A stretch of DNA of 64,000 bases from IMG/VR virus record IMGVR_UViG_3300024308_000016, positions 124,001-188,000 of that record; one strand, written 5' to 3'. Positions within the stretch are counted from its first letter, which is position 1; every line of letters starts with the position of its first letter. The position numbers were made by a program, and so were the translations under genes. A model generated the notes under the pieces. The model saw only the letters and a program-made list of their open reading frames with translations. It did not search any database and was not told where the DNA came from. Shown here in pieces: positions 28,031-61,870 of the stretch.

Positions 28031-29506
28031 ATGAGTGCCCGTCACTTCATCGCCACGTTCGAAGCCGAACTGGCGGTCAACAAGCTGGAGCAAGAAACGA
28101 TCGCCGCTGAAGGGGAATCCCCCAAGCAGTACGAGGAGTTCATCCAGCAAACGGAAGCCGAGGCGATCGAGAAAAAGGATGAGCTCGTCGAGGAGCAAAA
28201 GGAAGAAGATGAGTTCTCCGACCCAGATGCCGAGATGGGAGACGGCCAAGGTGGTGAGGGTGGTGATCAAGGCGATCCTGGCGACCTTGATGACTCTAGC
28301 GATCTTGGTGACAGTGGCGACAGCGATGGCGATAGTGGCGGCGAGGATGATCCGCAAGAGGTGGATGACGCCGACGCCATCGACGATGCCGAGGCACAAG
28401 CTGACCTCGCCGAAGAAAAAGCTGCCACCTCCGAAAACCTGAACGCCATCACCACGGGTCTGGGGCAGGCGGCATCCTTTGTGACCGCCTCTCTCAGCGA
28501 CCTGATGATGGGCCTAGGTCGTCTGGGTATCAAGTATACCCCGATCCTGGGCACTATGATGTACAAGGGCGTTATCTGGATGTTCTCGCGTACCGGCACG
28601 CTGCTATACCGCACCGGTGTGTCGATCGGCAAGTACATCGAGAGCAACTACAACTCAGCCACTCGACTCAGCGATCGCCTGGACAGCTGTATGGATCGCC
28701 TGAACGCGCTGGTGGAGAACTCCGTGCAGCGTCCCAAGGAGCCGTACCGCAACAAGGCCGTGATCAATCGCATCAAGGTGGGTAAGCGCCTGACCGTGGC
28801 CTACAACCTGGACCAAACCCGTACGGGCCTGGAGACGGTAATCAAATCTCTGGTGGAGGAGGCCAAGAATGGCTACAACATCATCGAAAAGCTCGCCGAG
28901 ACCAATCCCCACAATGGACCAAAGCACCTGGATGCTTTGCTGGAAGTCAACGCCAGCACACTCAAGGGTATGAGTCCCGGGTATGCGGATGGCTTCAAAG
29001 ATGACACAGGCTTGGTCCTGCAGTACAAGAGCGTGGATGTCTATCCAGGTGACATGGTCTTCATGCTCAATGCACCCCAGTGCCGCAACCGGGAGATGGA
29101 ATCCATCGCCCAGGCTTATCGAGAAGCCTCGTCTTTTTTGGCGGTCGACACTGCCTCCATCAAGCTCATCGAGCAGATGGACTATATGAGCCCCCATGAC
29201 CTGGTCAGGGTGGTGCAATCGGCTCGCCGGTTGGTGGAGATGATGAGATCCCTGGACTCCACGTACAAGGAGCTCCAAAAGGTCCAACCCTCTCTGGCAT
29301 ATAGTGTGAAGAAGTTGTTTCTTCAATTGGCCGATGACGAAGCGAAGACTCGTTTGTCTTCGTCGTATATCGAGCCGATGTATTTGCGGTCGTCACTCGC
29401 CTCCAGTGTGCTGATTCACGGCGTCATGGATTTGAATACTTATGTATCCAGATTGGTGGCAGCGAGCGTTCAGCTTGTCGAGGATCACATCCGGAAAATG
29501 TCCTAA
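28031..29506 (+). CDS. Head protein with a very acidic Gly/Asp-rich propeptide (phiKZ gp92-like)
   Basis: 491 aa; D/E/G-rich residues about 40-130 ending AATSE, a candidate cleavage site. Confidence 0.8.
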   Translation: MSARHFIATFEAELAVNKLEQETIAAEGESPKQYEEFIQQTEAEAIEKKDELVEEQKEEDEFSDPDAEMGDGQGGEGGDQGDPGDLDDSSDLGDSGDSDGDSGGEDDPQEVDDADAIDDAEAQADLAEEKAATSENLNAITTGLGQAASFVTASLSDLMMGLGRLGIKYTPILGTMMYKGVIWMFSRTGTLLYRTGVSIGKYIESNYNSATRLSDRLDSCMDRLNALVENSVQRPKEPYRNKAVINRIKVGKRLTVAYNLDQTRTGLETVIKSLVEEAKNGYNIIEKLAETNPHNGPKHLDALLEVNASTLKGMSPGYADGFKDDTGLVLQYKSVDVYPGDMVFMLNAPQCRNREMESIAQAYREASSFLAVDTASIKLIEQMDYMSPHDLVRVVQSARRLVEMMRSLDSTYKELQKVQPSLAYSVKKLFLQLADDEAKTRLSSSYIEPMYLRSSLASSVLIHGVMDLNTYVSRLVAASVQLVEDHIRKMS

Positions 29507-29683
29507 TCAGTTGGAACATTTGCCGACGCCCCAATCTGTGGAGTCTGCAAATGCCCTGAGAAGGCACCCCCTGGCGACCGCGATAGTTAGAAACATCCGT
29601 CAATTCGCTGGATCCCCCGCGACTGCCTGAGCTCCCCAGCTTGGGAATTTTGTCAAACCTTTCCCCTATCTTGGAGAAAACAC

Positions 29684-31000: not shown

Positions 31001-31031
31001 TTCTTCAAAGCCTGACACTCAGCGATGACTG

Positions 31032-31071
31032 ATACTCCTCCCGGGCCTTCGGGCCTGGGAGGAGTATTTTT
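31032..31071 (+). terminator. Intrinsic terminator
   Basis: ATACTCCTCCCGGGCC-TTCG-GGCCTGGGAGGAGTAT followed by Ts. Confidence 0.88.
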
Positions 31072-31138
31072 GTTGTCCTGTCTTCGGCAGACAGGGGCGA
31101 TCGTATCGTATGGTCCATCTTTTTATAGGGAGTCATGC

Positions 31139-32767
31139 ATGCCAGTGGTAAACATGTCGCTCAACAACACCTCTCAGTCCTTCGTTCGCCCTGTGGTGAT
31201 CGAGATCGTCAACCAGGTGATGGCAGCGACCAAGATAGACAAGAAGGTCCCCATCTTCTATGGCGGAGAGATGGGGCTGCAGCAAGCGGCAGGCTCTGGT
31301 GTTGACCAGGCCGATAATCGCCGAGCGCGCTTTGAGGCACTGCGCCGTATGGTGATTGAAGAAGAAGAGGTGTATGCTGAAGACCAGCATACTACCGACA
31401 TCGTGGGTAAGATCAACAACATCCCCATTTTTGCAGATCGTGCACTCGGTGTATACATCCTCCCCACCTACACCACCACAACCATGAACGTCAAGTTCAG
31501 GTACGAGACTCGCTCTAAGGAGGAGTGCCTTCGCTGGAGGCAGGAGATGACAATGAAGTACATGATGCTGCGCATCTCACTGATGCACCAGATCACGTAC
31601 TCGTATACACTACCTGAGCCTATCTGGGAGCTGGTGGAGAACATCTACGAATGCCGTGAAGCTGTCGCTGGCTACGGGGAGATGTTTGGGGAATACCTCA
31701 ACAAGTGCATGACCAACCGCCTCACCGTGATCGGCAATGAGAACGGTAAGAACCGGCAGTTCGCTGTTACTGAGCGTCAAGACCGTATCCAGGGCTTCTT
31801 TGACTTCACTACAGATCCTCACAAGCCTGAGTACGAGGGTGACAAGGGTGTGTGGGTGATCGAGTTCACTTACAGCTTCACCTACCAAAAGCCAGTCGGT
31901 GTGGACACCTGGTTTCCCATCATGGTGCACAACCAGTTCTTGAAGGACAAGTTCTTGGACTTCCAGCCCATGACGCTCACTCGTGATCCCTATATGCGGG
32001 ATATCCGGGATTGGTCGCTGGGGATGTTCGAGACAGGTCAGACTCTGGGCGTGATCAAGCCCCGTTACCCGTACTTGCGTATTCCGCAAGACGATGATTT
32101 CAACATCACCAACCCAAGCCCCGGCACTGGCACGTTCTTGCTGGTGTTGATGAAGCTGTCCGCCGATGGCGACAATACCTTCAACTTGAAGGAGCTCGGA
32201 GACACAGTGATCGATCCAGCTATCTTGAAGTGGCTGGAAGACGGGGAATGGAGGCACATCGGCAGGTTCGGCTCCTCCATCATCCAAGCGGAGGTCTACA
32301 AGAACGACCAACGACTGGCGGATCCTACCGTCTCGGTCGACAAAGACTTGAATGTGAAGCTACATGTGAAGATCGATCTGCGCTGCACTTATCGCGTCAG
32401 GTTCTCCCTGGTGACAGATCTGTCGTTCCTGCAGCTCGATGCATTCGAGCGCCTGCAGTGCCATCCCAAAGCGTTTGTCCGGATACTGGGAGCGATCAAC
32501 GAGCTGCTGTTGTACAGGTCGGACTTCCAAAGGCTGGGCAACCAGCAGCATATCTACCCGTGGCAGCTCACACGGGTCTACGAGGTGATCACGGGCACCC
32601 CAATCACCAACGGCTATGGAGGCTTTACCTCCGGCAGATGCCAGCCCAATTGGCAGGAGGGCTTTCTCGCTATCCCCGAGAAGGTAATCGAGCAAGCCCG
32701 GCGAGTACGCAAGAAACTCAAGACGGTGATGAACTACACCACCATCGCACACAGACAAGGAGAGTAA
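31139..32767 (+). CDS. Virion structural protein (phiKZ gp98-like)
   Basis: Start moved to ATG 31139 (GGGAG upstream); 542 aa; syntenic. Confidence 0.78.
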   Translation: MPVVNMSLNNTSQSFVRPVVIEIVNQVMAATKIDKKVPIFYGGEMGLQQAAGSGVDQADNRRARFEALRRMVIEEEEVYAEDQHTTDIVGKINNIPIFADRALGVYILPTYTTTTMNVKFRYETRSKEECLRWRQEMTMKYMMLRISLMHQITYSYTLPEPIWELVENIYECREAVAGYGEMFGEYLNKCMTNRLTVIGNENGKNRQFAVTERQDRIQGFFDFTTDPHKPEYEGDKGVWVIEFTYSFTYQKPVGVDTWFPIMVHNQFLKDKFLDFQPMTLTRDPYMRDIRDWSLGMFETGQTLGVIKPRYPYLRIPQDDDFNITNPSPGTGTFLLVLMKLSADGDNTFNLKELGDTVIDPAILKWLEDGEWRHIGRFGSSIIQAEVYKNDQRLADPTVSVDKDLNVKLHVKIDLRCTYRVRFSLVTDLSFLQLDAFERLQCHPKAFVRILGAINELLLYRSDFQRLGNQQHIYPWQLTRVYEVITGTPITNGYGGFTSGRCQPNWQEGFLAIPEKVIEQARRVRKKLKTVMNYTTIAHRQGE

Positions 32768-32768
32768 G

Positions 32769-34142
32769 ATGGCTATCGCTACACGCACGCCGGTCACCGA
32801 CGTGACGCCCAAGCCCACGATGCCCTATGCGTACACCGACAACTACAAAGGGTTGATGTACGATAACAACCATACTCCACTGGTGAGCCTGATCTCCTAC
32901 ATGGATGGCTCTCCGTGGACGGTGCAGTCGTACTTTCGGCAGAGCTTGGGCGAGCACAACGACCTGAAGATGCTCGACACAGTACTGGACGCAGAGTTCC
33001 AGGGCTACGAGCGGATCGACAAGCTGGAGATCCTCGTGGACACAGATCTGCAGTCCTCCAGCGATACTGTCCAGCAAGTGACCAAGACCAACGGCGCGGG
33101 TATGATCTACCCGTTCTTTGTTCCTAATGTCAATGACTATTTTATCGCGGTCACGGGCTTTCGGAACATGGGTCTGTTCCGGGTAACCAATGTCGACCGC
33201 CGTACCTTCCGTACGGACTCGGTGCACTACATCGAGTACACGATGGTTGGGTATCTGGACGATCTACCCAATGAAGCTGCCTCCTTGAAGGAGAAGACCG
33301 TGCGCACGTACGTTTTCTCCAGGGAGCGGCTGATGGAAGGGCTTGCCCCCATCCTGAAGACGGAGGTCTTCGAAGCCATAGGCGATCTGCGTTATGAGTA
33401 CGAGGCCATGGGTCGCTACTACCTTGACAACTTCCTTGACCGGGGAGCCAAGACGTTGATCTATCCGGGTCAGACCAACCACCGCATCTACGACCCATTT
33501 TTGGTGCAGTTCGTGATGCAGACGTTCAGCTACGACACGTTCGATGCCATCATCAACATGAAGCAGCTGAACAAGGATGGCAACCGGTATCTGGATCAGC
33601 CTCAGTTCTGGGATGTAATGATCAACCAAAACTGGGCAGAGCTCAAGTTCTGCAACCAGGTCATGGGCTTTGCCCGTACTGGTCAGTTCGATCCCAACAC
33701 GTACATCAAGAGCTTGGCCTTCCAGCGCGTGGACTATGTGGTGTTCCCGGATCAACCCGACATCTCCACGCGTTCGTATGACGATGAGCTCCCACTTCCC
33801 GTGGTCAAAGGCATCGCAGTCAAGACCACCAACGGCCGAGGCAAGACGCTCACTACCATCGAGAAGTCCTACTCGCTGGCCAACAAGCTCATCCCCAGCT
33901 ATCCCATGATCTTGGACGATGAACACTACGTGCTGTCCAAGAACTTCTATGACAACAAGGGAAGTGATCTGTCGCTGTTGGAGATCATGACACGCGACTA
34001 TATCCATCGCCGCACACTGGACCTCAAGCAGATCCTGCATATGGTCAAGCTGTATCCCTCCATGGAGAGGCTGGAGCAGTTTTACTATATCCCGATCCTG
34101 ATGACGCTGGTGCGCTACTTTGAAAAGAGTGCATACACATGA
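32769..34142 (+). CDS. Virion structural protein (phiKZ gp99-like; possibly neck)
   Basis: 457 aa; GGAG SD; PFFVPNVNDYF...YIEY pattern. Confidence 0.78.
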   Translation: MAIATRTPVTDVTPKPTMPYAYTDNYKGLMYDNNHTPLVSLISYMDGSPWTVQSYFRQSLGEHNDLKMLDTVLDAEFQGYERIDKLEILVDTDLQSSSDTVQQVTKTNGAGMIYPFFVPNVNDYFIAVTGFRNMGLFRVTNVDRRTFRTDSVHYIEYTMVGYLDDLPNEAASLKEKTVRTYVFSRERLMEGLAPILKTEVFEAIGDLRYEYEAMGRYYLDNFLDRGAKTLIYPGQTNHRIYDPFLVQFVMQTFSYDTFDAIINMKQLNKDGNRYLDQPQFWDVMINQNWAELKFCNQVMGFARTGQFDPNTYIKSLAFQRVDYVVFPDQPDISTRSYDDELPLPVVKGIAVKTTNGRGKTLTTIEKSYSLANKLIPSYPMILDDEHYVLSKNFYDNKGSDLSLLEIMTRDYIHRRTLDLKQILHMVKLYPSMERLEQFYYIPILMTLVRYFEKSAYT

Positions 34143-34759
34143 CCCAATCTCTGAGCAAGCAGCACCGAAACATCACCCGTATCTGGGTCGATCTGTATCG
34201 AGTGCTTGTACCCGCTGGCCGAGTCCGCTCCGTGGAGAGTCAACTCGGCCGGCCAGACCTTTTGACAGGTGACCGGCGTATCGATGATATGCAAGTCAAG
34301 GCGTTGACTCCCATCTACGTTACAATTGACGACATGGTGGAGTACTTCCGCGAGGGCACGGAAGTGCGCCTCACGAACGATCTGGACGCTGTCAAGATCT
34401 TCGACGCACTCATGGACCACGTGGGTTGCTGGAAGAGCGCACTGCAGACAGTCCTGAATGTGGGCGATGCTCCTGTAGAGGACCTGATCCTCATGGAGGA
34501 GTTTGCCGTGAGCATTTATGACATCGCCAAGTTCCGCATCTTCGAGGACAAGCGCGGTGATCTGATCCGCCGTATGAACAAGGGCTTCCGCCACTTTGGC
34601 GGTTTGCAGCGCACCACTACCTCGACACGCCGCCCAGCACCGGTCATGAAAGACAAGACCAACCTGGAAATCGATCAACTGCGCTACGAGCCCTCTCTGG
34701 ATGTGCTGCAGCGCGTAGCCGTGGAGCAAAGCATCAACCATGCCGATCGGGGATATTGA
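34139..34759 (+). CDS. Conserved hypothetical protein
   Basis: 206 aa; ATGA overlap with the upstream gene. Confidence 0.75.
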   Translation: MTQSLSKQHRNITRIWVDLYRVLVPAGRVRSVESQLGRPDLLTGDRRIDDMQVKALTPIYVTIDDMVEYFREGTEVRLTNDLDAVKIFDALMDHVGCWKSALQTVLNVGDAPVEDLILMEEFAVSIYDIAKFRIFEDKRGDLIRRMNKGFRHFGGLQRTTTSTRRPAPVMKDKTNLEIDQLRYEPSLDVLQRVAVEQSINHADRGY

Positions 34760-36143
34760 ATATACCCCACTATGGCAAGATGTAAAGGCCACCGTGTACT
34801 CGGGGCCTAAGCAAGTCAAGTTTGACTACTTTGTCATGGTGCATACCGAGCAAGGGGACTTCAATGTCTTCAAGCTCATCACGCTCGAAGACGAGTGTGA
34901 CTACGCCAATATGATCGGCTCCAACGTCAACTTGCAGTTCCAAGTGGGCCTGGGCGACTACCTGCTACGTCTGTATCCGTTTCGCGCCAACCTGGAGGTC
35001 AGTATCAAGAAAGTCCCACAACTGGAGACTGGAGGTACTGACATGGAGAAAGACGTCTCGGTAGTGCGCTACAAGGCAATCTTGAAGCCCGGCAAGAATG
35101 TGGAGCCCACCGGTACACGGATCACGGATCATGACTACCAGACACTGAATACATCCAACTTGGTTGATGTGTTTATCGAACTGCAAGACCGAAACTTTGA
35201 GCCTCTACGTCTGAAGACTTTCCCAGGTGGCACGTTCACCAATCTGACCGTCAAGGACATCATGACGGTGTGCGTGTTCGGAGAGTCCAAAAACGTACTG
35301 GTCGACGGCGCGGTGCCTGTGGATGGTATCGACATCGTGGAGCCTGACAACACCGCTCGTATCCCGTACTTGATCATGCCCAACATGAAAGCGGCCATGA
35401 TCCCTACATACCTGCAAGAGCGCTCGCTGGGTGTGTACAACGCGGGACTGGGCACCTTCTATCAACGGTACAAGGACAAGAGCTACTGGTACATCTACTC
35501 GCTGTTCAATCCTGAGCGGTTTGACGAGGACGTGGACCGGATGGTGTTCTTTGCGATGCCCAAGGAAAGGTTCCCAGGGATTGATCGCACCTATCGGCAA
35601 GAAGGCAAGATCACATATGTGGTAGTTACGGGAGACCGGGGTTACACGGACAGCGGGGACCTGACGGACGTCAACGAAGGTATCGGCTTTCGGATGCCCG
35701 ATGCCAACGCCATGATGAAAAAGCCTGTTGTCATGACAGAGCAAGGCCCCAAGGCTGACCGAGCACGGCTAAATACCGAAGTGGCTGGTAGAAAGCGCGC
35801 CGACGGAAACATCTTCGCGCCGGTGGTCACCAACTCCGCCAATCCGTACCGCCTCTACAGCCAGCTGGCTTGCCGCCAGCTCGCCCGAGTCGACGTGGTC
35901 TGGGAGAACTCTGATCCCGATCTCATCTACCCGGGCATGCCATGCAAGTATGTCTTCATGGACAAAGAAGAGTACAAAGAGCTCAAAGGCATCATCGTGT
36001 ACAAGTACTCCTGTCATTCATTGGTGGGGCGACCTGTCGTCTCAAGTACTTATCGCACCTCCACTCAAGTCACCATCATGCTGGAGCAGTTTATGGATCC
36101 TCCCCCGGAGCAGCCAACCATGAACGCCCCAGGAAAGTTCTAA
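34740..36143 (+). CDS. Virion structural protein (phiKZ gp101-like; possibly baseplate hub)
   Basis: 467 aa; GVYNAGLG.FYQ and WENSDPDLIYPGMPCK motifs. Confidence 0.78.
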   Translation: MPIGDIEYTPLWQDVKATVYSGPKQVKFDYFVMVHTEQGDFNVFKLITLEDECDYANMIGSNVNLQFQVGLGDYLLRLYPFRANLEVSIKKVPQLETGGTDMEKDVSVVRYKAILKPGKNVEPTGTRITDHDYQTLNTSNLVDVFIELQDRNFEPLRLKTFPGGTFTNLTVKDIMTVCVFGESKNVLVDGAVPVDGIDIVEPDNTARIPYLIMPNMKAAMIPTYLQERSLGVYNAGLGTFYQRYKDKSYWYIYSLFNPERFDEDVDRMVFFAMPKERFPGIDRTYRQEGKITYVVVTGDRGYTDSGDLTDVNEGIGFRMPDANAMMKKPVVMTEQGPKADRARLNTEVAGRKRADGNIFAPVVTNSANPYRLYSQLACRQLARVDVVWENSDPDLIYPGMPCKYVFMDKEEYKELKGIIVYKYSCHSLVGRPVVSSTYRTSTQVTIMLEQFMDPPPEQPTMNAPGKF

Positions 36144-36145
36144 CT

Positions 36146-39061
36146 ATGAAAATCGGCACATTTGAAGACTTTGGCTCTGCGCCTCCATTGTCGCAGGCAG
36201 AACCCATCAACCCGACTCCGGGCATGGGTGTGGAGCAACCGGAGGTGATGCAAGTCACCATCCCCGAGCAAGACATCGACCGAGACACGGGCTTGCCTGT
36301 CACTATGCGCAATGCCGAATACGACAAGCTCACGGTGGACGTGTTCGACAATGCCATGCTGACGATGGAGGACGAGGAGTTTGACCTGCAGCAAAAGGTC
36401 CAGCAACTGAACTTGCTGCAAGATGCCTTCAACACCATCGAAGACACCGAGAACGTCTCGCCTGCCCAGGTACGTGCCATCGGCGTGCAGCTGTCGATGC
36501 TCGACAAGTACCTGCCCCGCGAAGACCGCCTCATCCGTGATGCTCATCTGGGGGGCGCCTCCGAGGACACAGTCAAGAACCGTGTGGTCACCCAAGAAGC
36601 GCTGGGCACTTCCATGAAGGTGCTGTTGCCGATCATCGCGGCCATCGGCGTGATGCTGGGCGGTCTGTACCTGTTCCTGCGCTCCAGGAAGGTGGCTGAC
36701 GCTCAAGCTTCACACAACGAGGCCGTCTTCAAGGCCATGCATCGGGAGGTCGACGCAGCTGTGCAAGGCGCCGCTGAAACCCTCATGCGGTCCCCCCTGG
36801 CCAAGGTGGCCAATGGCGACATGTCGGCTGTGCCGGGCATGAAGCAAGCCAGCGACAACCTGGACCGAGCGATCGAGCAGATCCAGCGAGAGCTGCAAGC
36901 TGCGAGTGTGGAGGCACAAGCTGCCCGCAAAGCGGCTGTAAAGATCGCCCGTGCCAAGGAGCGCCTGATCACCAAGCTGCAGCGCTACAATTTCATCCAG
37001 TCGACCGAGCTGGGCAAGAACGCTTTTGCGCAAGCTGCCAATGCTTATACCAAGTATGGGCAACTCGGCGAGATCGGTGAGGAGCTGGCTGCGACCATCA
37101 GCGATCTTCTCAAGCGAACCACCAAGGAGATGTCCGGTGGCTCCATCGATCCAGCCAAAGCTGGTGAGATCTCGGAAGCGCTCGGTGCTGCTTCCAGCAA
37201 AGCCATCAGCCGCATCAAGTCTGTGGGCATGTCCATGTCGGCCAGCCAGCTCGGATCGCTGATCGACGGTGCTGATCGCCAAAACCAGCTGGTGTGCTTT
37301 CCGATGTTCCCAGGCTCTGCTGGCCCCATCTTGGCGATCGGCGACTCCTCTGCCTCGTACGTCTCACCCAACCGTGACAACACGCCACCTGTGACGACTG
37401 CCGTGACGCTAATGGAGTACATCTCCATGCGCGCCAGTTTCAACTCCATCCCTGTGGCTACCCGCAAGGCGGAGAAGGAAGCCGAAGCTCGCGCCAAGGT
37501 GGGCAAGGATATCACGGAACTCGCTCGCAAGCTGCGCTCTATCGGCAACACCGACGAAGAGCGTGCCAACATCCGTGGCCTGGCGTCTCACCTGAACTCG
37601 GCGCGACAGATCATCACCATGCTGGACCGCACGTGGTTGGAGCTGTGTGCATGCGCCAACGGCCTGACTGATCTGGCCCACTCCTCGCTGGAGGTGGCCC
37701 GCATCACCAAGGAAGCGGCAAGTGCACCAGCTGCGAAAAAGCCTGATGCGCCGCAGCAGCCTACCACCGAGAGCCTGGATGCGGAGATCGCCTCCTTCGA
37801 GAGCCGCCAAACTCCGGTGCCAGTGGCCACTCACGAAGCCATGAGCGCCACAGCCGTGGGCGTGATCGCTGCAGTCATCGCTATGGCACTGGGTGCGCTC
37901 TTTGCGTTCCTGCGTGACAAGCAAATCGCCAAACGCCAATCAGCCACCATCAAGTTCACATTCACTCCTGTGAACTCCGACACTGGTGCCGCCAAGCAGC
38001 GTGCCAGCTCCACAGAGTTTGCCGACCAGATGGCCAGGGCCACTCGCATGCGTTCGGCCGAGTATGAGCGCAAGTGGAAGGAGACAATGGACCGGCTGGA
38101 CAAGACACTCAACGAGATGTATGAGGAAGCAAAACGTTCTGACGAGGAGACGACTCGTCGGTTCAAGGAAAGCCAAGCCGCTCAAGGCTCCAATGGCACT
38201 GCTTCCTCGGCCGATGAGATCCCGCCTCAAGCCGGCAAGGAAATGCTCAAGCTGCGCAAGACCCTGCAAAGCTTCAACTTCCAGGGGGAAGTGACGATCA
38301 AGAAGCAGGAGTTCGCAATTGCCATCCAGAACTACCAGGACTATTCGGCGCTGGCCACCATCGCTGAAGACCTGGGGGCTGCGGCGAAAGTCTCCTTGGA
38401 TCTGCTGGCCCGGGAGCTCACCGACGAGGGCATCACTCCGGAGGCCAACGACAAGATCACCCAGGGCCTGACCAAGGCGCTGATGCGTTCGCACGACGAG
38501 ATCAAATCCGTGGGCACTGCTATGAGTGTTTCCCAAGCCAAGGGTCTGATGACCCAAGCGGCCGGCGATCTGCAAGGCGGCACGTATGTGGTCTTCCCGT
38601 TGTTCCGGGGGTCTATCTCGGCGGCCATGAGCATCAGCGCCCGTGGAGAGGTCCATCCTGGTCATCTGAGCAAAGAAGGCAACGACGTCAACCCTGCTCT
38701 GCAGATGAACTTCGATGACTTCATGGCACTTAAGAGTCAGTTCGAGACCATTCCCAAGGCCACGGAAGCTGCTGAGCGCGCAGCTGAGGACCGAGCCCGT
38801 ATCGGCAAGTCCATCCAGCAAACGCTCCAGCGTCTGAAGAGCCACAAGCAGTTCTCCTCCGAGAACTCCAACATCCGCTCTATTGGCAAGCTGCTGACTG
38901 ACACCACCGCCACGCTTCGCCAGATCGACCAGTGCTGGCTCAAGCTGTGCGGAGATGCCAACCGGTTGGTGGAAGTGGCCTCTTTGGTCAAGGCCATCAC
39001 CACCAAGGGTGATAAGACCGCCCGTGGGGAAGACACCCCAATGGCTGACCGCGTCAACTGA
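36146..39061 (+). CDS. Tandem-duplicated head/ejection protein (probable polyprotein)
   Basis: Start moved to ATG 36146; 971 aa; two homologous modules, each beginning T-X-E|A plus a hydrophobic helix. Confidence 0.8.
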   Translation: MKIGTFEDFGSAPPLSQAEPINPTPGMGVEQPEVMQVTIPEQDIDRDTGLPVTMRNAEYDKLTVDVFDNAMLTMEDEEFDLQQKVQQLNLLQDAFNTIEDTENVSPAQVRAIGVQLSMLDKYLPREDRLIRDAHLGGASEDTVKNRVVTQEALGTSMKVLLPIIAAIGVMLGGLYLFLRSRKVADAQASHNEAVFKAMHREVDAAVQGAAETLMRSPLAKVANGDMSAVPGMKQASDNLDRAIEQIQRELQAASVEAQAARKAAVKIARAKERLITKLQRYNFIQSTELGKNAFAQAANAYTKYGQLGEIGEELAATISDLLKRTTKEMSGGSIDPAKAGEISEALGAASSKAISRIKSVGMSMSASQLGSLIDGADRQNQLVCFPMFPGSAGPILAIGDSSASYVSPNRDNTPPVTTAVTLMEYISMRASFNSIPVATRKAEKEAEARAKVGKDITELARKLRSIGNTDEERANIRGLASHLNSARQIITMLDRTWLELCACANGLTDLAHSSLEVARITKEAASAPAAKKPDAPQQPTTESLDAEIASFESRQTPVPVATHEAMSATAVGVIAAVIAMALGALFAFLRDKQIAKRQSATIKFTFTPVNSDTGAAKQRASSTEFADQMARATRMRSAEYERKWKETMDRLDKTLNEMYEEAKRSDEETTRRFKESQAAQGSNGTASSADEIPPQAGKEMLKLRKTLQSFNFQGEVTIKKQEFAIAIQNYQDYSALATIAEDLGAAAKVSLDLLARELTDEGITPEANDKITQGLTKALMRSHDEIKSVGTAMSVSQAKGLMTQAAGDLQGGTYVVFPLFRGSISAAMSISARGEVHPGHLSKEGNDVNPALQMNFDDFMALKSQFETIPKATEAAERAAEDRARIGKSIQQTLQRLKSHKQFSSENSNIRSIGKLLTDTTATLRQIDQCWLKLCGDANRLVEVASLVKAITTKGDKTARGEDTPMADRVN

Positions 39062-41582: not shown

Positions 41583-42122
41583 ATGAGTTGTAATAGTCGA
41601 GATGATATCAAAACTGGCGACTTGCTGGCGTGGTCTGATTACTCGAAAGAGCACAGTACGTTTTGGTTGAAGTTGGTCCGCCTAGCGACGATGTCCGAGT
41701 TTGGGCACGTCTCTGTGGCTTGGCGCCAGGGCGAGCAGCTCTTTCACGTGGAGGCAGTGATGCCTTTCATCCGTGTAGTGCCTGTGCCTGAAGGTGAGTC
41801 CTTCTTCTACATCCCTATGTCCCGTTTTCTGAAGACGCCGCCCAGGATGTCAGAGTTCTTCTCTGACAAGATCGGGCAGCGCTACAGCGTGCTGGATGCG
41901 GTCAAAGCCTATCTCGGTATAGCGACGCAACGCGACAACAACTGGCAGTGTGCAGAGTTGTCTAATGCGTTCTACGCTGAGCATGGTGTGGATCTGGGAT
42001 CTAAGGCTATGACGCCTTCTCGGGTTGTTTATGCTGCGCTCGATGAGTGCGGCGCATCGTTGATGAGGATCAACGCCATAAAGTCCTGTTCTATAGGCAA
42101 GGAGTCGAATACAAATGGCTGA
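41583..42122 (+). CDS. Permuted papain-like (NlpC/P60, YiiX/YebB-like) amidase/peptidase
   Basis: IKTGDLL, then FGHVSV (His) preceding WQCAEL (Cys): the permuted catalytic order. Confidence 0.8.
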   Translation: MSCNSRDDIKTGDLLAWSDYSKEHSTFWLKLVRLATMSEFGHVSVAWRQGEQLFHVEAVMPFIRVVPVPEGESFFYIPMSRFLKTPPRMSEFFSDKIGQRYSVLDAVKAYLGIATQRDNNWQCAELSNAFYAEHGVDLGSKAMTPSRVVYAALDECGASLMRINAIKSCSIGKESNTNG

Positions 42123-42715: not shown

Positions 42716-43993
42716 ATGGCAAATCTGAATATCGAACGCCTGGTCGCGCTTCCCGAAGTCGCCAACCGCAAGCCCTCGACGCTGTACATCGTCAAGAGCG
42801 CCTCCAACGCCAACCTGGTGGACTTCTACGTCACTGGCTCGCTGGTCGAAGGTCAGCCCCTGGAGATCCGCCACGCGCTGAGCTCCCAGGACGTGCAGCA
42901 AGCGATCGACGAGGCCGTGGCCAACATCGACCCCGCCAGCCTGCCCGACATCCCTGGCTCCAAGATCATCTCGGAGATCAGCGTCAACACCACCGGCAAT
43001 GCAGCCACCGCCACCAAGGCCCTGACGGCGGACAGCGCCACCACGGCGGGCACCGCGGCCAAGGCCGATGAAGCCACTTCCCTGGCCCCTGGCGCCACCA
43101 TCAACGGCGTGCTGTTCACCGGCACCGCCGCCATCGTGGTCCCGGCTGTGGACACCGAAACGCCTCGCGTGCCCCAAACGGCCGTGGGCACCTCGGTCGC
43201 CCCCCTGGTGGACGGCAAGGTCCCCGTGCAGTTCATCCCGGCTGCCTTCGACAACATCAACACGTTCCCCACCAAGAGCGACTTCCCCGCTGAAGGTGCA
43301 CGTGACGTCATCTACATCTCCGAAGATGACAATGCGATGTATCGCTGGGCAGGCACCGAGTACATCCTGATCCCCACGGGTGCAGGCGGTACCGACACGG
43401 CTCTGAAGCTGGCCAACGCTCGTCAGATCCGTCTGTCGGGTGATGCCACCGGTCAAATCGTGGGCGCCACCGGCTTCGACGGCTCCGCTGACGTCACCAT
43501 CGAGGTGACGCTCAAGACCATCGAAGGCGCTGCCGGCACGGGCTCCAAGGTCACCGTCAACGAAAAGGGCCTCGTCACCGATGTGGAAGCCCTGACGGCT
43601 GCTGACATCCCTGACCTGCCTGGTTCCAAGATCACCTCCGCCCTGTCGGTGGACACCACCGGCAATGCTGCCACCGCCGACAAGCTTAAGACCCCCCGGA
43701 CCATCACGTTCGAAGGCGCTCTGAGCGGCACGGCCACGTTCGACGGCTCCGCTGATGTGACCGTGACCCTGTCGGGTTCCAGCACTGGCGTGACCCCGGG
43801 CGAATACACCAAGGTCACCGTCAACGCCGGCGGCCTGGTCACGGCTGGCGATCTGCTGACCCCGGCGGACATCCCCAACCTGCCCGGCTCCAAGATCACT
43901 TCCGATCTGACCGTGAACACCAGCGGCAAGGCCGCCACTGCCGGCGTCGCCGACACGGCCAAGGCCATCGAGCTGGCCGCTGCCGAGTGGTAA
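42716..43993 (+). CDS. Fibre protein with three internal repeats
   Basis: 425 aa; repeated IP.LPGSKI.S...V.TTG.AATA; ends in Trp; strong codon bias. Confidence 0.8.
   Translation: MANLNIERLVALPEVANRKPSTLYIVKSASNANLVDFYVTGSLVEGQPLEIRHALSSQDVQQAIDEAVANIDPASLPDIPGSKIISEISVNTTGNAATATKALTADSATTAGTAAKADEATSLAPGATINGVLFTGTAAIVVPAVDTETPRVPQTAVGTSVAPLVDGKVPVQFIPAAFDNINTFPTKSDFPAEGARDVIYISEDDNAMYRWAGTEYILIPTGAGGTDTALKLANARQIRLSGDATGQIVGATGFDGSADVTIEVTLKTIEGAAGTGSKVTVNEKGLVTDVEALTAADIPDLPGSKITSALSVDTTGNAATADKLKTPRTITFEGALSGTATFDGSADVTVTLSGSSTGVTPGEYTKVTVNAGGLVTAGDLLTPADIPNLPGSKITSDLTVNTSGKAATAGVADTAKAIELAAAEW
42940..43945 (+). repeat. Three in-frame coding repeats of about 75 nt
   Basis: Copies near 42940-43012, 43601-43680 and 43865-43942. 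Confidence 0.8.
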
Positions 43994-44035
43994 GCACTCG
44001 CGGCTGTTAGCAACCCACTACACGGAAGGATAGAT

Positions 44036-44524
44036 ATGACTCTCGTATCGCCTTCCGCGACTCGTGCCCGCGCCGGTGGCGCGCTCGCCCCTATGAAGTT
44101 CAGCGCTCTGCCGAAACTTCAGGTGGTGAGCGACGCCATCGAGCTGCCGGTCCTGTTCGCGGGAGAAAACTACACCATCGAAGCGGGTCTGTTCAAGACC
44201 ATCGTGACGAAGTCGACCATCGGCCTGGACAAGGTGGACAACACCTCCGACATGGCCAAGCCGATCTCCACGGCGACCCAGGCGGCCATCGATGAGCTGT
44301 TGGACCGCATCAACGAGAAGGCCAACCTCTCGGATCTGGGAGCTCTGGGCGCTCGCGTCGGCGCCAATGAGCGCAAGATCGCGGATCTGGAGCTGTTCAT
44401 GACGTCGGGTCTGATCCCAGCTGACCGCATCACTGGCCTGAACCCGGTGATCGATGCTCGCATCGACGCCAAGATCGACGGCATCGTGGCCCCCACGGTG
44501 TTCGCCGGTCCCAATGACTGGTAA
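44036..44524 (+). CDS. Fibre-associated protein
   Basis: 162 aa; IGLDKVDNTSDMAKPISTATQAA fibre motif; ends in Trp. Confidence 0.78.
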   Translation: MTLVSPSATRARAGGALAPMKFSALPKLQVVSDAIELPVLFAGENYTIEAGLFKTIVTKSTIGLDKVDNTSDMAKPISTATQAAIDELLDRINEKANLSDLGALGARVGANERKIADLELFMTSGLIPADRITGLNPVIDARIDAKIDGIVAPTVFAGPNDW

Positions 44525-44531
44525 GCAGTCC

Positions 44532-44576
44532 TAGATCCTCCAGGGGCCCCTTACGGGGCTCCTGGGGGCATCTATG
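44532..44576 (+). terminator. Long hairpin ending in TATG
   Basis: TAGAT..CCAGGGGCCCC-TTAC-GGGGCTCCTGG..ATCTATG. Confidence 0.7.
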
Positions 44577-44627
44577 GTCGCAAATAAGATGGACTACAAA
44601 AGTCATCCTTAGAATTTTGGAGTATGT

Positions 44628-59656: not shown

Positions 59657-61870
59657 GTGAACTTCAAAGATCTGATCTCGCCCAGCACCAGCGGGCACGA
59701 ACCGATGGCGATGCCCGCTCAGAAGGTGCGCCAAGCACTGCAGGGCAACCAGGCCATCTCCGTCACTGCCGCCAAGGCCGTGGTGAGCATGGAAAGCCGC
59801 GCCGGCATCCAAGGCGCTGAGCTCGAAAACCTGCACGCCCTGTCCAGCGACATCGGCACTTTCCTGGGCGAAATCAAGGACCGTCTGGTCAGCGCCAAGC
59901 CCAACAAGGAAGGCAAGCTGCCCTTCGGCACGATGACCCACGAATCCCGTGCGGCCGCGGCCATGACCGGTCTGATGATGGCCTCCGACACCTCCATGGG
60001 CGCTCTGCGCGCACAGACCCTGAAGGCGCCGGCCGGCGGCGAAGGCGTCACCGTGGTGAACTTCGAAGGCAAGGGCGGCTTCGACACTCGTCAGTACATC
60101 GTGACGACCGAAGCGTTCAAGAACTACGACCTGGACAACAGCCGCATCTTCTCGACGCTGTTCAACTACAGCATCGTCGACTTCGATGACTACATCCGCA
60201 CGTTCTGGCGCCCCGTCACCATGTCGCCCGACAGCTCCTTCGTCGAGCTGCTGGTCAACGTGCTGACCGTCTTCAACGGCTACGAACACCGCATCGACGG
60301 CGAACATCGCGACTGGATGCGTCACAACCTGGTCCGCGCCATCGCCGACCACACCATCCTGCACACGAACCTGACCGAAGCCATCCCCGTGGTGCGCCCC
60401 GAATCGGCCAAGTTCTTCATGGATCCCGCGGTCGTGCCGCCCACCGACATCATGCAAGCCGGCGACCTGCCCGTCACCACGGCTCCGCTGAAGTTCGGCG
60501 TGGAAAATGCCTCCCTGATCTCCCTGGCCTCTCCCGGCTGGCTGATCAAGACCGGCGCGCTGGACCAGCGTGACGGTATCGACCCCGGCGTCAAGATGGC
60601 CCGTGTGGTGATCGCGCTGGCCAACGACGTGCTGAGCTTCGATGTCAAGGGCCTGCCCGGCTCCGAGTTCAACGAAGCGCCCCAGGGCGACCGCCAGCTG
60701 ATCCAGCTGAACTGGGTCACCACCAGCTTCAAGGTGGACAAGGACACCCTGAACGCCGACGGCACGCCTCTGGCCGACCTGGCCATCGTCAAGACCGGCG
60801 AGTACGTGCTGCGCATCAAGATGAACATCACGCTGACGCTGAACATCGAAACCGGTGAACTGATCTCGAACGCCCAGAGCGCTTCGATCCGCTCGCTGGT
60901 GGACAAGGACGGCAACACCGTGGCGCCCACGGACGCGAACTACATCGCCATCCAGGCCGCTCTGGCCGGCAAGAAGGAAGCCGGCTTCGTGCTGGAAGCC
61001 TATCGCAACAACGAAGACCGTCGTCAACGTGGTCAGCTGATCAACATCCGCCAGTTCGCCGAGAACGTGGTCGTGCCCTGGCGCGATCCGATCGCTGCCG
61101 AGCGTCCCGCCCACGGCTCGACCGAGCAGGACACGGCTGACCTGACGGCCCTGATCTCCGCCACTCGCATCCGCATCCACAACGAAGGCGTGACCGCGCT
61201 GCTGGACGCTGAAGACGTGATCCGTGCCTCGGCCGTGGCTCCCGGTGAAGTGCCCAACTCCACCGAGATCCCCGTCTCGCTGGGCGTCGGCCGCTACTAC
61301 GTCATCCCGACGTACCACCACGAAGAGCTGGACATGCTCAAGATCGTGGACTCGCTGAAGTCCAGCGAGCGCGCCGCTGACATCCAAGCCGCCATCGTCG
61401 CCACGATGCGCAACCGCCTGGCACACGTCTACACGGACTCGCAGTACAAGGCCGCTCAAGACGCCCTGACCGGCGGCACCGGCAGCCGTCCCAAGGTGGC
61501 TGTGGTCTGTGACCCCGTGGTCGCTCGCTACATCATCGAGCCGGGTGAACTGCGCTCGCTGGTCGACTTCGAAATGATCGTGATCCCGATCCTGGACTTC
61601 CGTATGCGCGGCAAGCTGCGCATGGTGTTCGTCTCGGACGACGGCGGCACGGACGTGAACTACCTGAACTTCGGCTACCTCTTCTGGTCGCCCGAGCACG
61701 TTCTGGTGGCCAACATGAGCCGTACCGGCGCGTACAACCGCGAAACGCAGGTCAGCCCGCGCTATCGCTTCTACGTGGCCTGCCCGATCATGATCTCGCT
61801 GGACATCGTCCACATCGAGGAAGCGCTGGCCAAGATGCCGATCAACGTGGACAACAAGGACCGTCCGTAA
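59657..61870 (+). CDS. Major capsid protein (phiKZ gp120-like)
   Basis: 737 aa; propeptide ending VTTE|AF; FW.PVT.SPD motif; C-terminal P.Y.F....PIM...D; strongest codon bias in the window; follows dnaB and gp119 in the conserved order. Confidence 0.92.
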   Translation: MNFKDLISPSTSGHEPMAMPAQKVRQALQGNQAISVTAAKAVVSMESRAGIQGAELENLHALSSDIGTFLGEIKDRLVSAKPNKEGKLPFGTMTHESRAAAAMTGLMMASDTSMGALRAQTLKAPAGGEGVTVVNFEGKGGFDTRQYIVTTEAFKNYDLDNSRIFSTLFNYSIVDFDDYIRTFWRPVTMSPDSSFVELLVNVLTVFNGYEHRIDGEHRDWMRHNLVRAIADHTILHTNLTEAIPVVRPESAKFFMDPAVVPPTDIMQAGDLPVTTAPLKFGVENASLISLASPGWLIKTGALDQRDGIDPGVKMARVVIALANDVLSFDVKGLPGSEFNEAPQGDRQLIQLNWVTTSFKVDKDTLNADGTPLADLAIVKTGEYVLRIKMNITLTLNIETGELISNAQSASIRSLVDKDGNTVAPTDANYIAIQAALAGKKEAGFVLEAYRNNEDRRQRGQLINIRQFAENVVVPWRDPIAAERPAHGSTEQDTADLTALISATRIRIHNEGVTALLDAEDVIRASAVAPGEVPNSTEIPVSLGVGRYYVIPTYHHEELDMLKIVDSLKSSERAADIQAAIVATMRNRLAHVYTDSQYKAAQDALTGGTGSRPKVAVVCDPVVARYIIEPGELRSLVDFEMIVIPILDFRMRGKLRMVFVSDDGGTDVNYLNFGYLFWSPEHVLVANMSRTGAYNRETQVSPRYRFYVACPIMISLDIVHIEEALAKMPINVDNKDRP

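What the first reader, a model, noticed from the sequence alone, without database searches (positions are those of the whole stretch)
36146..39061. Two-module head protein that looks like a protease-resolved polyprotein of membrane-targeting ejection proteins
Seen: module 1 starts at 36599 (TQE|ALGTSMKVLLPIIAAIGVMLGGLYLFLR) and module 2 at 37838 (THE|AMSATAVGVIAAVIAMALGALFAFLR). Aligned blocks are IKSVGMSMSASQ/IKSVGTAMSVSQ, VCFPMFPGS/VVFPLFRGS, IPVATRKAEKEAEARAKVGKDI/IPKATEAAERAAEDRARIGKSI and LDRTWLELC/IDQCWLKLC. One acidic propeptide precedes both, and the linker holds two T-X-E sites. Inference: one capsid-targeting propeptide delivers two diverged paralogs, and cleavage exposes an N-terminal TM helix on each.
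Basis: partly seen in the sequence, partly recalled or inferred. Interest (0 to 1): 0.7.

Follow-up and report, generated by a model that had tools for sequence, protein, structure and literature searches.

The report
Tandem membrane-helix internal head protein
A 971-residue gene of an uncultured phiKZ-like giant phage is a real tandem duplication of a module that folds like the phage's packaged, host-injected "internal head" proteins; each copy starts with a membrane-grade hydrophobic helix placed just after a likely head-protease cutting site, so it is a rare variant of a known protein class that could tie injected proteins to membranes.

Summary
Gene 36146-39061 (+) encodes 971 aa. Residues 163-511 align with 574-945 at 29% identity, E = 8e-33. 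Two 22-residue hydrophobic helices (Kyte-Doolittle 2.4 and 2.7) each begin 5-6 residues after a T-x-E-A site.

The window belongs to a 272-kb phiKZ-like phage. Sequence searches find only three relatives:
- a self copy;
- a 48% identical orthologue with the same two modules;
- a 492-aa single-module paralogue, encoded as its own gene in a ~98% identical phage.

The evidence for a head-internal protein cut by the prohead protease is indirect.
- An AlphaFold model of one module matches only PF12699 (phiKZ internal head protein) models. Pfam and profile-profile comparison do not detect the family.
- The N-terminal leader MKIGTFE|D matches the leaders of this clade's PF12699 proteins.
- The T-x-E pattern matches this phage's predicted capsid-protein maturation site (VTTE|A) and conserved sites in 28 PF12699 relatives.

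Cleavage, virion residence and membrane insertion are all untested. The upstream gene is the baseplate hub, so gene position alone does not say "head". The acidic N-region is the best conserved part, so it may be more than a disposable propeptide.

Verdict: a new variant of a known kind.

The parts
36146..39061 (+). Whole gene, 971 codons plus stop (protein P0001, 105 kDa)
   Evidence: Orthologue P0003 is 48% identical over the full length.
36146..36166 (+). Leader MKIGTFE (putative first cut E7|D8). The same 21 nt are the direct repeat that flanks the P0004 gene insertion in related genomes.
   Evidence: Leader shared with PF12699 proteins. E7 is an invariant column in 8 sequences of two subfamilies. 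Repeat and indel.
36167..36598 (+). Acidic N-terminal region, residues 8-151 (16 kDa, pI 4.2), with conserved T-M-E75, T-I-E99 and A-S-E140
   Evidence: 73.5% identical to P0003. Aligns with the N-region of the TM-less syntenic protein P0034, E = 3e-4.
36590..36598 (+). T-Q-E (149-151), putative protease site V-V-T-Q-E|A
   Evidence: E151 is invariant in 8 sequences. The pattern matches VTTE|A of the capsid protein and the PF12699 sites.
36614..36679 (+). Hydrophobic helix 1, residues 157-178, followed by R-S-R-K
   Evidence: Kyte-Doolittle 2.37. 90% identical in P0003.
36599..37717 (+). Module 1, residues 152-524 (about 40 kDa, pI 9.2)
   Evidence: Self-alignment. AF2 model pLDDT 75, pTM 0.73. 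BFVD neighbours are PF12699 proteins.
37718..37837 (+). Linker, residues 525-564, with T-T-E|S (540-542), S-F-E|S (550-552) and T-H-E|A (562-564). T-K-E|A (521-523) lies just upstream.
   Evidence: P0003 keeps A-Q-E|A, S-N-E|S, S-F-E|D and T-N-E|A at the matching places.
37841..37909 (+). Hydrophobic helix 2, residues 566-588, followed by R-D-K
   Evidence: Kyte-Doolittle 2.66. Only 27% identical in P0003, but its hydrophobicity is kept.
37838..39058 (+). Module 2, residues 565-971 (44.4 kDa, pI 8.6)
34740..36143 (+). Context: homologue of phiKZ gp101, the baseplate hub (T4 gp27-like), directly upstream
   Evidence: role taken from PMC13250141
29684..31000 (+). Context: the only Pfam-detectable PF12699 (phiKZ_IP) gene of this genome, with leader MSFKLGAAVATME13|N
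28031..29506 (+). Context: 491-aa acidic protein with the same kind of leader (MSARHFIATFE11|A)
60101..60112 (+). Context: V-T-T-E (149-152) of the major capsid protein (gene 59657-61870), the predicted maturation site
   Evidence: Alignment with phiKZ gp120, cut at E163|N164 according to PMC11297242

Best explanation
The gene encodes a head-internal protein of the phiKZ 'internal head / inner body / injected protein' class (PF12699-like fold). Its mature domain has been duplicated in tandem. Proposed architecture: a short leader ending T-F-E7; an acidic, well conserved N-region (8-151); the site V-T-Q-E151|A; a hydrophobic helix plus a basic helical/beta module (152-524); a short acidic linker rich in x-x-E sites; the site A-T-H-E564|A; and a second hydrophobic helix plus module (565-971). 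Proposed mechanism (inferred): the leader and N-region take the precursor into the prohead. The phage's gp175-type prohead protease then cuts at the T-x-E sites. This frees two basic products of about 40-44 kDa, each beginning with a hydrophobic helix. The products are packaged with the DNA and ejected into the host, like other PF12699 proteins. There the N-terminal helix could anchor them in a membrane, such as the early-infection vesicle. Shown here: the duplication, the hydrophobic helices, the conserved sites, the fold neighbourhood, the shared leader, the presence of the protease gene, and a single-module paralogue encoded as a separate gene. Inferred: virion location, every cleavage, ejection and membrane insertion.
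For: Duplication: E = 8e-33. Phage type: phiKZ-like jumbo phage of 272 kb with gp91-, PF12699-, gp98-, gp99-, gp100- and gp101-like genes upstream in phiKZ order. Fold: the AF2 model of module 1 (pLDDT 75, pTM 0.73) gives 24 BFVD matches at E < 1e-3, all jumbo-phage virion or internal head proteins. 22 of those 24 are among the top 50 matches of a model of the window's own bona fide PF12699 protein. The same model finds nothing below E = 0.07 in the PDB, so helical bias does not explain the matches. A protein language model puts 36 of its 100 nearest clusters in PF12699, but the score of 0.88 makes this only a lead. Leader: M-K-[LIF]-[GA]...T-x-E starts only three genes of this genome: this one, the PF12699 gene and the 491-aa neighbour. 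Shuffled proteomes give 0.13. It matches the leaders of phiKZ gp92-97 and gp162, of which gp93 E13|S14 and gp162 E17|R18 are documented cuts (PMC11297242). Protease: a gp175 homologue lies at G000:C1:246208-246894, E = 3e-30. Specificity: the capsid protein has IVTTE|AF beside the phiKZ E163 site. In 28 PF12699 relatives the conserved E columns 13, 97, 121 and 138 have P3 = T/S/A, a hydrophobic P4 and P1' = S/N. SPN3US gp245 likewise prefers V/A at P4 and a small P1' (PMC10052503). Site conservation: E7 and E151 are two of only eight invariant columns across two subfamilies that are 16-22% identical. All five modules keep T-x-E-[A/S] just before the helix. Separate gene: P0004 (492 aa: acidic N-region, LTKE|S, hydrophobic helix, one module) sits next to an identical copy of this gene in a ~98% identical phage. 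Charge flanks: both helices carry the positive charges on their C-side. A two-span hairpin would not show this; two independent N-terminal anchors would (direct reading of the sequence, inference). Precedent: phiKZ gp162 and gp93 are cut into several pieces that stay in the head (PMC11297242). PF12699 proteins are proteolysed, injected, and found with the lipid EPI vesicle (bioRxiv 10.1101/2024.03.24.586471; 10.64898/2026.04.21.720040).
Against: There is no experimental datum for this protein or its relatives; all come from metagenomes. Sequence methods do not place it in PF12699. There is no Pfam or PHROG hit, and hhalign gives probabilities of 5% and 0.2%. Structural matches have low TM-scores (0.27-0.45) and large rmsd, and the model rests on five sequences. 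The gene lies after the baseplate hub gene, not inside the PF12699 operon. Known PF12699 proteins of phiKZ, PhiPA3, Goslar and FLC9, and most of the 28 relatives, have no TM-grade segment. Four relatives reach Kyte-Doolittle 2.0-2.1, but in a helix that contains K and N. The corresponding first helix of the PF12699 domain is part of the helical bundle in the model, so the hydrophobic helix might be structural. The high conservation of the N-region and of helix 1 argues against a merely disposable propeptide. How a protein with two TM-grade helices avoids co-translational membrane insertion before prohead entry is unexplained.
Confidence: 0.55

Rival explanations
1. It is a PF12699-like internal head protein that stays as one two-domain chain; at most the leader and N-region are trimmed. 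The hydrophobic helices are buried structural elements, for example the first bundle helix or an oligomerisation core of an inner-body-like assembly. They are not membrane anchors.
For: In bona fide PF12699 relatives the site T-I-E138 is followed by an amphipathic hydrophobic helix and L-L-R-N-R. This aligns with T-x-E + helix + F-L-R-S-R of the modules (shuffle z of 2-8, weak). In the AF2 model that helix is part of a long bundle helix. Helix 1 is 90% identical between orthologues, which suits specific protein contacts. Long PF12699-containing proteins exist in other phages: phiKZ gp97, Goslar gp53, PhiPA3 gp102.
Against: The two helices have 22 uncharged residues and Kyte-Doolittle values of 2.4-2.7, above every PF12699 protein scanned. 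Helix 2 keeps its hydrophobicity but not its sequence (27% identity), which is typical of a lipid-facing anchor. The linker keeps several x-x-E sites in both orthologues. In the module model the helix has low confidence and is not packed (pLDDT 30-55). The other long PF12699 proteins show no internal repeat.
Confidence: 0.2
2. It is a tail or tail-lumen protein (tape-measure-like or a membrane-piercing cargo) encoded next to the baseplate hub. It is ejected first, and its hydrophobic helices form or line the channel through the inner membrane.
For: The gene follows the gp101 (hub) homologue directly, with a 2-nt spacer. Tail-fibre-like genes lie downstream. Neither the phiKZ atlas paper nor the Goslar structure paper mentions a tape measure, by word search. 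It is established knowledge that tape measure proteins are helical, often carry hydrophobic segments and are often processed.
Against: The fold neighbours are head-internal PF12699 proteins. The leader is the one used by PF12699 proteins. The putative sites match prohead-protease sites, and that enzyme acts inside proheads. Nearly identical phages differ by a whole extra module gene, which a length-determining protein would not tolerate easily. phiKZ, PhiPA3, Goslar and FLC9 have no such gene after the hub. 971 residues is short for a tail of about 200 nm.
Confidence: 0.1
3. It is not a virion component. It is an inner-membrane protein made late, for example a tether or organiser of membrane-associated prohead assembly, inserted co-translationally through its two hydrophobic segments.
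For: Internal TM-grade segments that follow a 151-residue N-domain would normally be recognised by the host targeting machinery (established knowledge). No virion data exist.
Against: Both helices have their positive flank on the C-side, which conflicts with a two-span hairpin topology. The PF12699-like fold, the shared leader and the conserved T-x-E sites all point to the processed head-protein class. The TM-less syntenic homologue P0034 shares the N-region and the site, so the basic role of the locus does not need a membrane helix.
Confidence: 0.1

Closest known systems
phiKZ internal head / inner-body proteins of Pfam PF12699 (gp92-gp97, gp162, gp163; Goslar gp53-gp58)
   Same: Predicted fold neighbourhood. 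A short N-terminal leader ending in (S/T)-x-E. An acidic N-part followed by a helix-rich basic domain. Multiple paralogues per genome. Location in the same structural gene block of a phiKZ-like phage.
   Different: Not detectable by the Pfam HMM or by profile-profile comparison. Encoded after the hub gene rather than between the gp91- and gp98-like genes. Two mature domains in one ORF. Each domain starts with a TM-grade hydrophobic helix, which the known members lack.
phiKZ gp162 and gp93, which are multi-fragment products of the gp175 protease
   Same: One precursor is cut at several x-x-E sites and more than one piece is kept in the head. The N-piece binds the capsid shell and the C-piece is the helix-rich domain (PMC11297242). 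The conserved N-region here could be the analogue of that N-piece.
   Different: Those precursors contain one PF12699 domain, and their fragments are not paralogous to each other. Here the two products would be diverged copies of the same module.
T4 internal proteins IPI-III, with a capsid targeting sequence removed by gp21; and the SPN3US E proteins gp53/gp54, cut by gp245 at A-x-E
   Same: Works alike: an N-terminal targeting part, cleavage after Glu by the prohead protease, basic cargo packaged with the DNA and ejected. SPN3US gp245 prefers V/A at P4 and a small P1', and its propeptides hold several sites (PMC10052503).
   Different: No sequence relationship was found. P3 is T here, against L/I in T4 and A in SPN3US. 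Those proteins have no hydrophobic anchor and no tandem modules.
Membrane-inserting ejection proteins of podoviruses (T7 gp14/15/16, P22 gp7/16/20)
   Same: Capsid-packaged proteins that end up in host membranes after ejection. This is my own knowledge and was not tested here.
   Different: No fold or sequence similarity was seen. Those proteins form a trans-envelope channel for a tail-less-tube phage. A contractile-tail jumbo phage has no known need for one.

Membership tests
Pfam PF12699 (phiKZ_IP, phiKZ-like internal head proteins) | Match to the family HMM above the gathering score | tested here: not met
   No PF12699 hit for P0001 even at E <= 0.1. A genome-wide scan finds only the 438-aa gene at window 29684-31000.
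Pfam PF12699 (phiKZ_IP, phiKZ-like internal head proteins) | Profile-profile similarity to aligned family members | tested here: not met
   hhalign of the 5-module alignment against 8 and against 28 family members gives probabilities of 5.2% and 0.15%.
Pfam PF12699 (phiKZ_IP, phiKZ-like internal head proteins) | Shared three-dimensional fold (long helices, a small beta meander at about two thirds of the length, two long C-terminal helices) | tested here: met
   Foldseek against BFVD gives 24 matches at E < 1e-3, all jumbo-phage virion or internal head proteins. 22 of them are in the top 50 of the bona fide PF12699 model. TM-scores are only 0.27-0.45. Both sides are predictions.
Pfam PF12699 (phiKZ_IP, phiKZ-like internal head proteins) | N-terminal leader of 7-17 residues ending in (S/T)-x-E | tested here: met
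   MKIGTFE7|D compares with ..ATxE13|N in 25 of 28 relatives and with phiKZ gp93 ..SLE13|S. Only 3 genes of the genome start this way; shuffles give 0.13.
Pfam PF12699 (phiKZ_IP, phiKZ-like internal head proteins) | Packaged in the head, cut by the gp175-type protease, injected with the DNA | not testable with these tools
   The phage is uncultured and no proteome is available.
Substrates of the phiKZ gp175 / SPN3US gp245 prohead protease | Cleavage after Glu in a small-x-E motif (S/A/G-x-E in phiKZ by my own recollection of Thomas et al. 2012, not verified here; A-x-E in SPN3US), with the protease encoded by the phage | tested here: inconclusive
   The protease homologue is present (E = 3e-30). 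P3 is T, outside the published sets. But T is the residue at the predicted capsid-protein site and at conserved PF12699 sites of this clade. Cleavage itself was not observed.
Tail tape measure proteins | A single essential copy whose length sets the tail length; largely helical; not processed by the head protease | tested here: not met
   The module number varies between ~98% identical phages. The fold and the leader are of the head-internal class.
Polytopic inner-membrane proteins | Hydrophobic spans whose flanking charges fit one consistent topology | tested here: not met
   Both helices have their basic flank on the C-terminal side (RSRK; RDKQIAKR), read directly from the sequence. This was judged by hydropathy only; no TM predictor was run.

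The most novel reading that the evidence does not exclude
After cleavage the two modules are ejected with the genome, along with the third module P0004 in phages that carry it. They insert through their N-terminal helices into the inner-membrane-derived early phage infection (EPI) vesicle. That would make them the first phage-encoded integral membrane components of that compartment. They would be PF12699-type injected proteins that have evolved a direct lipid anchor, so membrane shaping or DNA tethering at the vesicle could be tested with a defined protein.
Probability: 0.15. Interest if true: 0.85.

Novelty: new variant of a known kind. Interest (0 to 1): 0.55.

Why it matters
PF12699 proteins are packaged in hundreds to thousands of copies in chimallivirus heads and injected with the DNA. 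They are found with the lipid-bounded early infection vesicle, and recent papers call their role an unsolved question. None of the known members has a membrane anchor.

A PF12699-like protein whose mature domain starts with a TM-grade helix right after a protease site would be a natural handle on two questions: whether and how injected head proteins touch the vesicle membrane, and how hydrophobic cargo is kept soluble inside a capsid.

The locus also shows how such cargo evolves. It has a tandem fusion of two old paralogues. It also has a third module that is gained or lost precisely at a 21-nt repeat encoding the shared leader.

The limits are plain. Only three metagenomic lineages carry the family, no host is known, and every functional step is inferred.

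Tried and rejected
**Searches that found nothing**
- Megablast of the locus and tblastn of P0001 against 50,697 phage records: no match. The same holds for the TM-less syntenic protein P0034.
- Pfam and PHROGs on P0001: only sub-threshold noise.
- A word-based search of 5.8 billion proteins found only the self copy and one orthologue.
- An HMM search of 1.84 billion representatives added only P0004.
- hmmsearch with the module profile and with the N-region profile against the phage's own ORFs: no further paralogue.
- hhalign against PF12699 alignments: not significant.
- Foldseek against the PDB: nothing below E = 0.07. The top rows are ClyA/HlyE pore-forming toxin, at probability 0.14, which I do not count as evidence.
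- ESM Atlas shape search and the module-2 feature search: nothing usable.
- PF03420 (T4 gp21 protease) in the genome: no hit. blastp of phiKZ gp175 against my ORF set also failed, because my greedy ORF caller had dropped the gene. A six-frame search found it.

I rebuilt the alignment from permitted database hits only.

**Ideas rejected**
- Internal translation start for module 2 at M566: rejected, because the Met is not kept in P0003.
- Tandem repeats as a general feature of long PF12699 proteins (phiKZ gp97, Goslar gp53, PhiPA3 gp102, FLC9 gp334): rejected, because none shows a significant self-match.

**Not run**
- Complex prediction, because the report makes no binding claim.
Full report
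**1. What is in the sequence**

The ORF runs from 36146 to 39061 on the + strand (971 codons). It starts two bases after the stop of the upstream gene.
- BLASTP of the first 560 residues against the rest gives one long alignment, 163-511 vs 574-945. It has 29% identity over 376 columns and E = 8e-33.
- With another split point the alignment begins at residue 147 and takes in the T-x-E sites.
- A 19-residue Kyte-Doolittle scan finds two strong hydrophobic segments, 157-178 (2.37) and 566-588 (2.66).
- Each segment begins five to six residues after T-x-E-A (VVTQE|ALG, VATHE|AMS). Each is followed by a basic cluster (RSRK, RDKQIAKR).
- The first 151 residues have net charge -17 and pI 4.2. The two modules have pI 9.2 and 8.6.

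The word 'transmembrane' rests on hydropathy only.

**2. What genome this is**

The window is bases 124001-188000 of a 272,393-bp IMG/VR virus record. The genes upstream of the ORF follow phiKZ order:
- a gp91-like vertex protein gene (27397-28017);
- a 491-aa acidic protein gene (28031-29506);
- a PF12699 'internal head protein' gene (29684-31000);
- homologues of phiKZ gp98, gp99, gp100 and gp101 (31025-36143).

The 2026 phiKZ atlas assigns gp98 as tail terminator, gp99 as stopper and gp101 as the T4 gp27-like baseplate hub (PMC13250141). The gene under study therefore follows the hub gene, and its position alone does not make it a head protein. phiKZ, PhiPA3, FLC9 and Goslar have no comparable gene after the hub.

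The major capsid protein gene lies in the window at 59657-61870. A homologue of the phiKZ head maturation protease gp175 lies elsewhere in the genome (E = 3e-30).

**3. Relatives**

The family is very rare. A word-based search of 5.8 billion proteins found only an identical copy and one orthologue, P0003 (973 aa, 48% identity, same two modules). A full HMMER profile search of 1.84 billion representatives with the four aligned modules added only one more protein, P0004.

P0004 is 492 aa long. It is a single-module version with the leader MKIGTFEN, an acidic N-region (net -18), the site LELTKE|SMG, a hydrophobic helix (2.31) and one module.

P0004 is encoded in a contig that is about 98% identical to the window in nucleotides. 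There it sits between the hub gene and a gene that encodes a protein identical to P0001.
- Laying public contigs on the window shows that the 1,479-nt insert lies between two copies of the 21 nt ATGAAAATCGGCACATTTGAA (36146-36166).
- The insert is present in two invertebrate-gut metagenomes.
- It is absent in the source sample and in another gut metagenome.

The unit 'acidic N-region + T-x-E + hydrophobic helix + module' exists as a free-standing gene. The three module types are old paralogues, 21-31% identical to each other.

A more distant clade (loci L013, L015) has six PF12699 genes in the canonical place. At the post-hub position it has a 491-aa protein, P0034.
- The N-region of P0034 aligns in register with residues 65-161 of P0001 (E = 3e-4). 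QVTME|N lies on VVTQE|A.
- What follows the site in P0034 is amphipathic, not TM-grade.
- Across the eight N-regions of both subfamilies (16-22% identity) only eight columns are invariant. Two of them are E7 and E151, the P1 residues of the putative leader site and of the pre-helix site.

**4. Fold**

An AlphaFold2 model of module 1 was built from the five-module alignment. It has mean pLDDT 75 and pTM 0.73. It shows long helices, a four-strand beta meander at about two thirds of the length, and two long C-terminal helices. The hydrophobic helix itself is poorly defined.
- Foldseek against BFVD gives 24 matches at E < 1e-3. All are virion or 'internal head' proteins of phiKZ-like phages: PhiEaH1, 201phi2-1, PhiPA3, RP12, Psa21, Noxifer.
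- For comparison I modelled the window's own bona fide PF12699 protein from 28 homologues (pLDDT 79) and searched the same library. 22 of the 24 module matches are within its top 50.
- The module model finds nothing below E = 0.07 in the PDB, a library of similar size. The viral matches are therefore not a helical-bias artefact.
- A protein language model places 36 of the 100 nearest clusters of P0004, and 32 of 100 for P0034, in PF12699. The scores (0.88, 0.85) make these leads only.

Against membership: there is no Pfam hit, hhalign probabilities are 5% and 0.2%, and TM-scores are only 0.27-0.45. I therefore call the modules PF12699-like in fold. I do not call them members by sequence.

**5. 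The leader and the protease motif**

The PF12699 proteins of this clade begin M-x-K-[LF]-[GA]-x-[IL]-x-A-T-x-E13|N (T at P3 in 25 of 28). The 491-aa neighbour begins MSARHFIATFE11|A. P0034 begins MKFAQLIPTSE11. P0001 and P0004 begin MKIGTFE7|D/N.

In the whole genome only three genes start with this pattern. Shuffled proteomes give 0.13.

The phiKZ paralogues have the equivalent leader with S at P3: gp93 MSLLKMLDKLSLE13|S, and likewise gp92, gp94, gp95, gp97 and gp162. The cuts at gp93 E13|S14 and gp162 E17|R18 are documented (PMC11297242).

Further conserved Glu columns in the 28 relatives (97, 121, 138) have P3 = T/S/A, a hydrophobic P4 and P1' = S.

phiKZ's capsid protein is cut at E163|N164. 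In the alignment, the only small-x-E site near that position in this phage is IVTTE|AFKNYD.

SPN3US gp245 cuts after A-x-E with V/A preferred at P4 and a small P1', and its propeptides hold several sites (PMC10052503).

So V-T-Q-E|A, A-T-H-E|A, I-T-K-E|A and P-T-T-E|S fit what this clade's protease most likely recognises. This is inference from homology and conservation. No cleavage has been seen.

**6. How it most likely works**

The architecture copies that of PF12699 precursors: a leader, an acidic N-part, a (S/T)-x-E site and a helix-rich basic domain. Two things differ.
- The first helix of the mature domain has become fully hydrophobic.
- The unit 'site + helix + domain' has been duplicated in tandem.

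A weak local alignment puts T-I-E138 + amphipathic helix + LLRNR of PF12699 proteins on T-x-E + hydrophobic helix + FLRSR of the modules. The shuffle z is 2-8, uncorrected.

Both helices carry their basic flank on the C-side. That is inconsistent with a two-span hairpin. It fits two independent N-terminal anchors, which needs the chain to be cut.

Between orthologues helix 1 is 90% identical, while helix 2 keeps only its hydrophobicity (27% identity). The latter is what a lipid-facing anchor looks like.

The N-region is the most conserved part (73.5% identity, against 40-45% for the module bodies). That suits contacts with the shell or core, like the capsid-bound N-arm of phiKZ gp93. It suits a peptide that is merely discarded less well.

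My best reading (about 0.55): a head-internal, protease-processed precursor that yields two basic products of about 40-44 kDa with hydrophobic N-termini.
- Ejection is plausible by analogy with PF12699 proteins.
- Membrane insertion is the least secure step.

**7. Rivals**

- (a) One uncut two-domain head protein whose hydrophobic helices are structural (0.2).
- (b) A tail-lumen or tape-measure-like protein encoded beside the hub (0.1). The fold, the leader and the module-number variation between near-identical phages argue against it.
- (c) A non-virion inner-membrane protein (0.1). The charge flanks and the TM-less homologue argue against it.

**8. Comparison and novelty**

The closest known things are the phiKZ PF12699 proteins and, for multi-product processing, phiKZ gp162 and gp93. 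Functionally it resembles the T4 internal proteins and the SPN3US E proteins.

It differs from all of them in three ways.
- It has a tandem of two paralogous mature domains. No significant internal repeat is seen in phiKZ gp97, Goslar gp53, PhiPA3 gp102 or FLC9 gp334.
- It has TM-grade helices. These are absent from the PF12699 proteins of phiKZ, PhiPA3, Goslar and FLC9 and from most of the 28 relatives. Four relatives reach Kyte-Doolittle 2.0-2.1, but in a helix that contains K and N.
- It lies after the hub gene.

I rate it a new variant of a known kind, of moderate interest. The interest would rise sharply if the modules proved to be membrane-anchored injected proteins of the early infection vesicle.

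Noticed in passing
window 36146-36166; L006 10001-11499: A 1,479-nt insert carrying a whole extra gene (P0004, 492 aa, single module) is present in some near-identical genomes (runs X2, X3) and absent in others (the window, X5). It is bounded by a 21-nt direct repeat that encodes the shared leader MKIGTFE, so it looks like a precise gain or loss by recombination at the repeat.
   Followed up: yes
window 29684-31000; L013 8506-17138; L015 1-8215: This genome has only one Pfam-detectable PF12699 gene between the gp91-like and gp98-like genes. A related clade has six in a row there (phiKZ has eight in all). The two (or three) PF12699-like modules after the hub may make up for the short canonical array.
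   Followed up: partly
window 28031-29506: A 491-aa protein without a Pfam or PHROG match starts with the PF12699-type leader (MSARHFIATFE11|A). An extremely acidic, low-complexity stretch follows. It sits where phiKZ has gp92, which the Goslar and EPI-vesicle papers count among the PF12699 proteins.
   Followed up: partly
window 60101-60112 (capsid protein gene 59657-61870): The predicted capsid-protein maturation site is V-T-T-E|A, next to the aligned position of phiKZ E163|N164. A second T-H-E|S lies in the propeptide (residues 94-96). This suggests the clade's protease accepts T at P3.
   Followed up: partly
L015 13460-14935 (P0034) and relatives P0035-P0038: A TM-less 480-491-aa protein family occupies the same post-hub position in a related clade. 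It shares the leader, the N-region and the V-T-x-E site with P0001. It has no match in cultured phages.
   Followed up: partly
P0005-P0033, around residues 138-175 of P0005 (window 29684-31000): In bona fide PF12699 proteins the conserved T-I-E138 is followed by an amphipathic, fairly hydrophobic helix (Kyte-Doolittle up to 2.1) and an invariant N-R. This may be the ancestor of the TM-grade helix of the modules.
   Followed up: partly
window 41583-42122: A 179-aa ORF inside the structural block matches a PHROG annotated enoyl-CoA hydratase/carnitine racemase-like (E = 4e-8). That is an odd annotation for this position.
   Followed up: no
window 42716-47096: Tail-fibre-like genes lie downstream: a 425-aa protein, a 162-aa protein, and an 822-aa protein with a T4 gp34 trimerisation domain (PF21446, E = 9e-9).
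   Followed up: no
window 29666-31018 (-) and other long antisense ORFs: At about 57% G+C the window carries many long antisense ORFs. A greedy longest-ORF caller chose the 450-aa antisense ORF over the real PF12699 gene and also dropped the protease gene.
   Followed up: yes
window 36146-39061: Near-identical sequence occurs in a subsurface metagenome, in invertebrate-gut and gut metagenomes, in a fermentation metagenome, in runs labelled with single organisms, and at low share in wastewater RNA libraries. The host is unknown.
   Followed up: no
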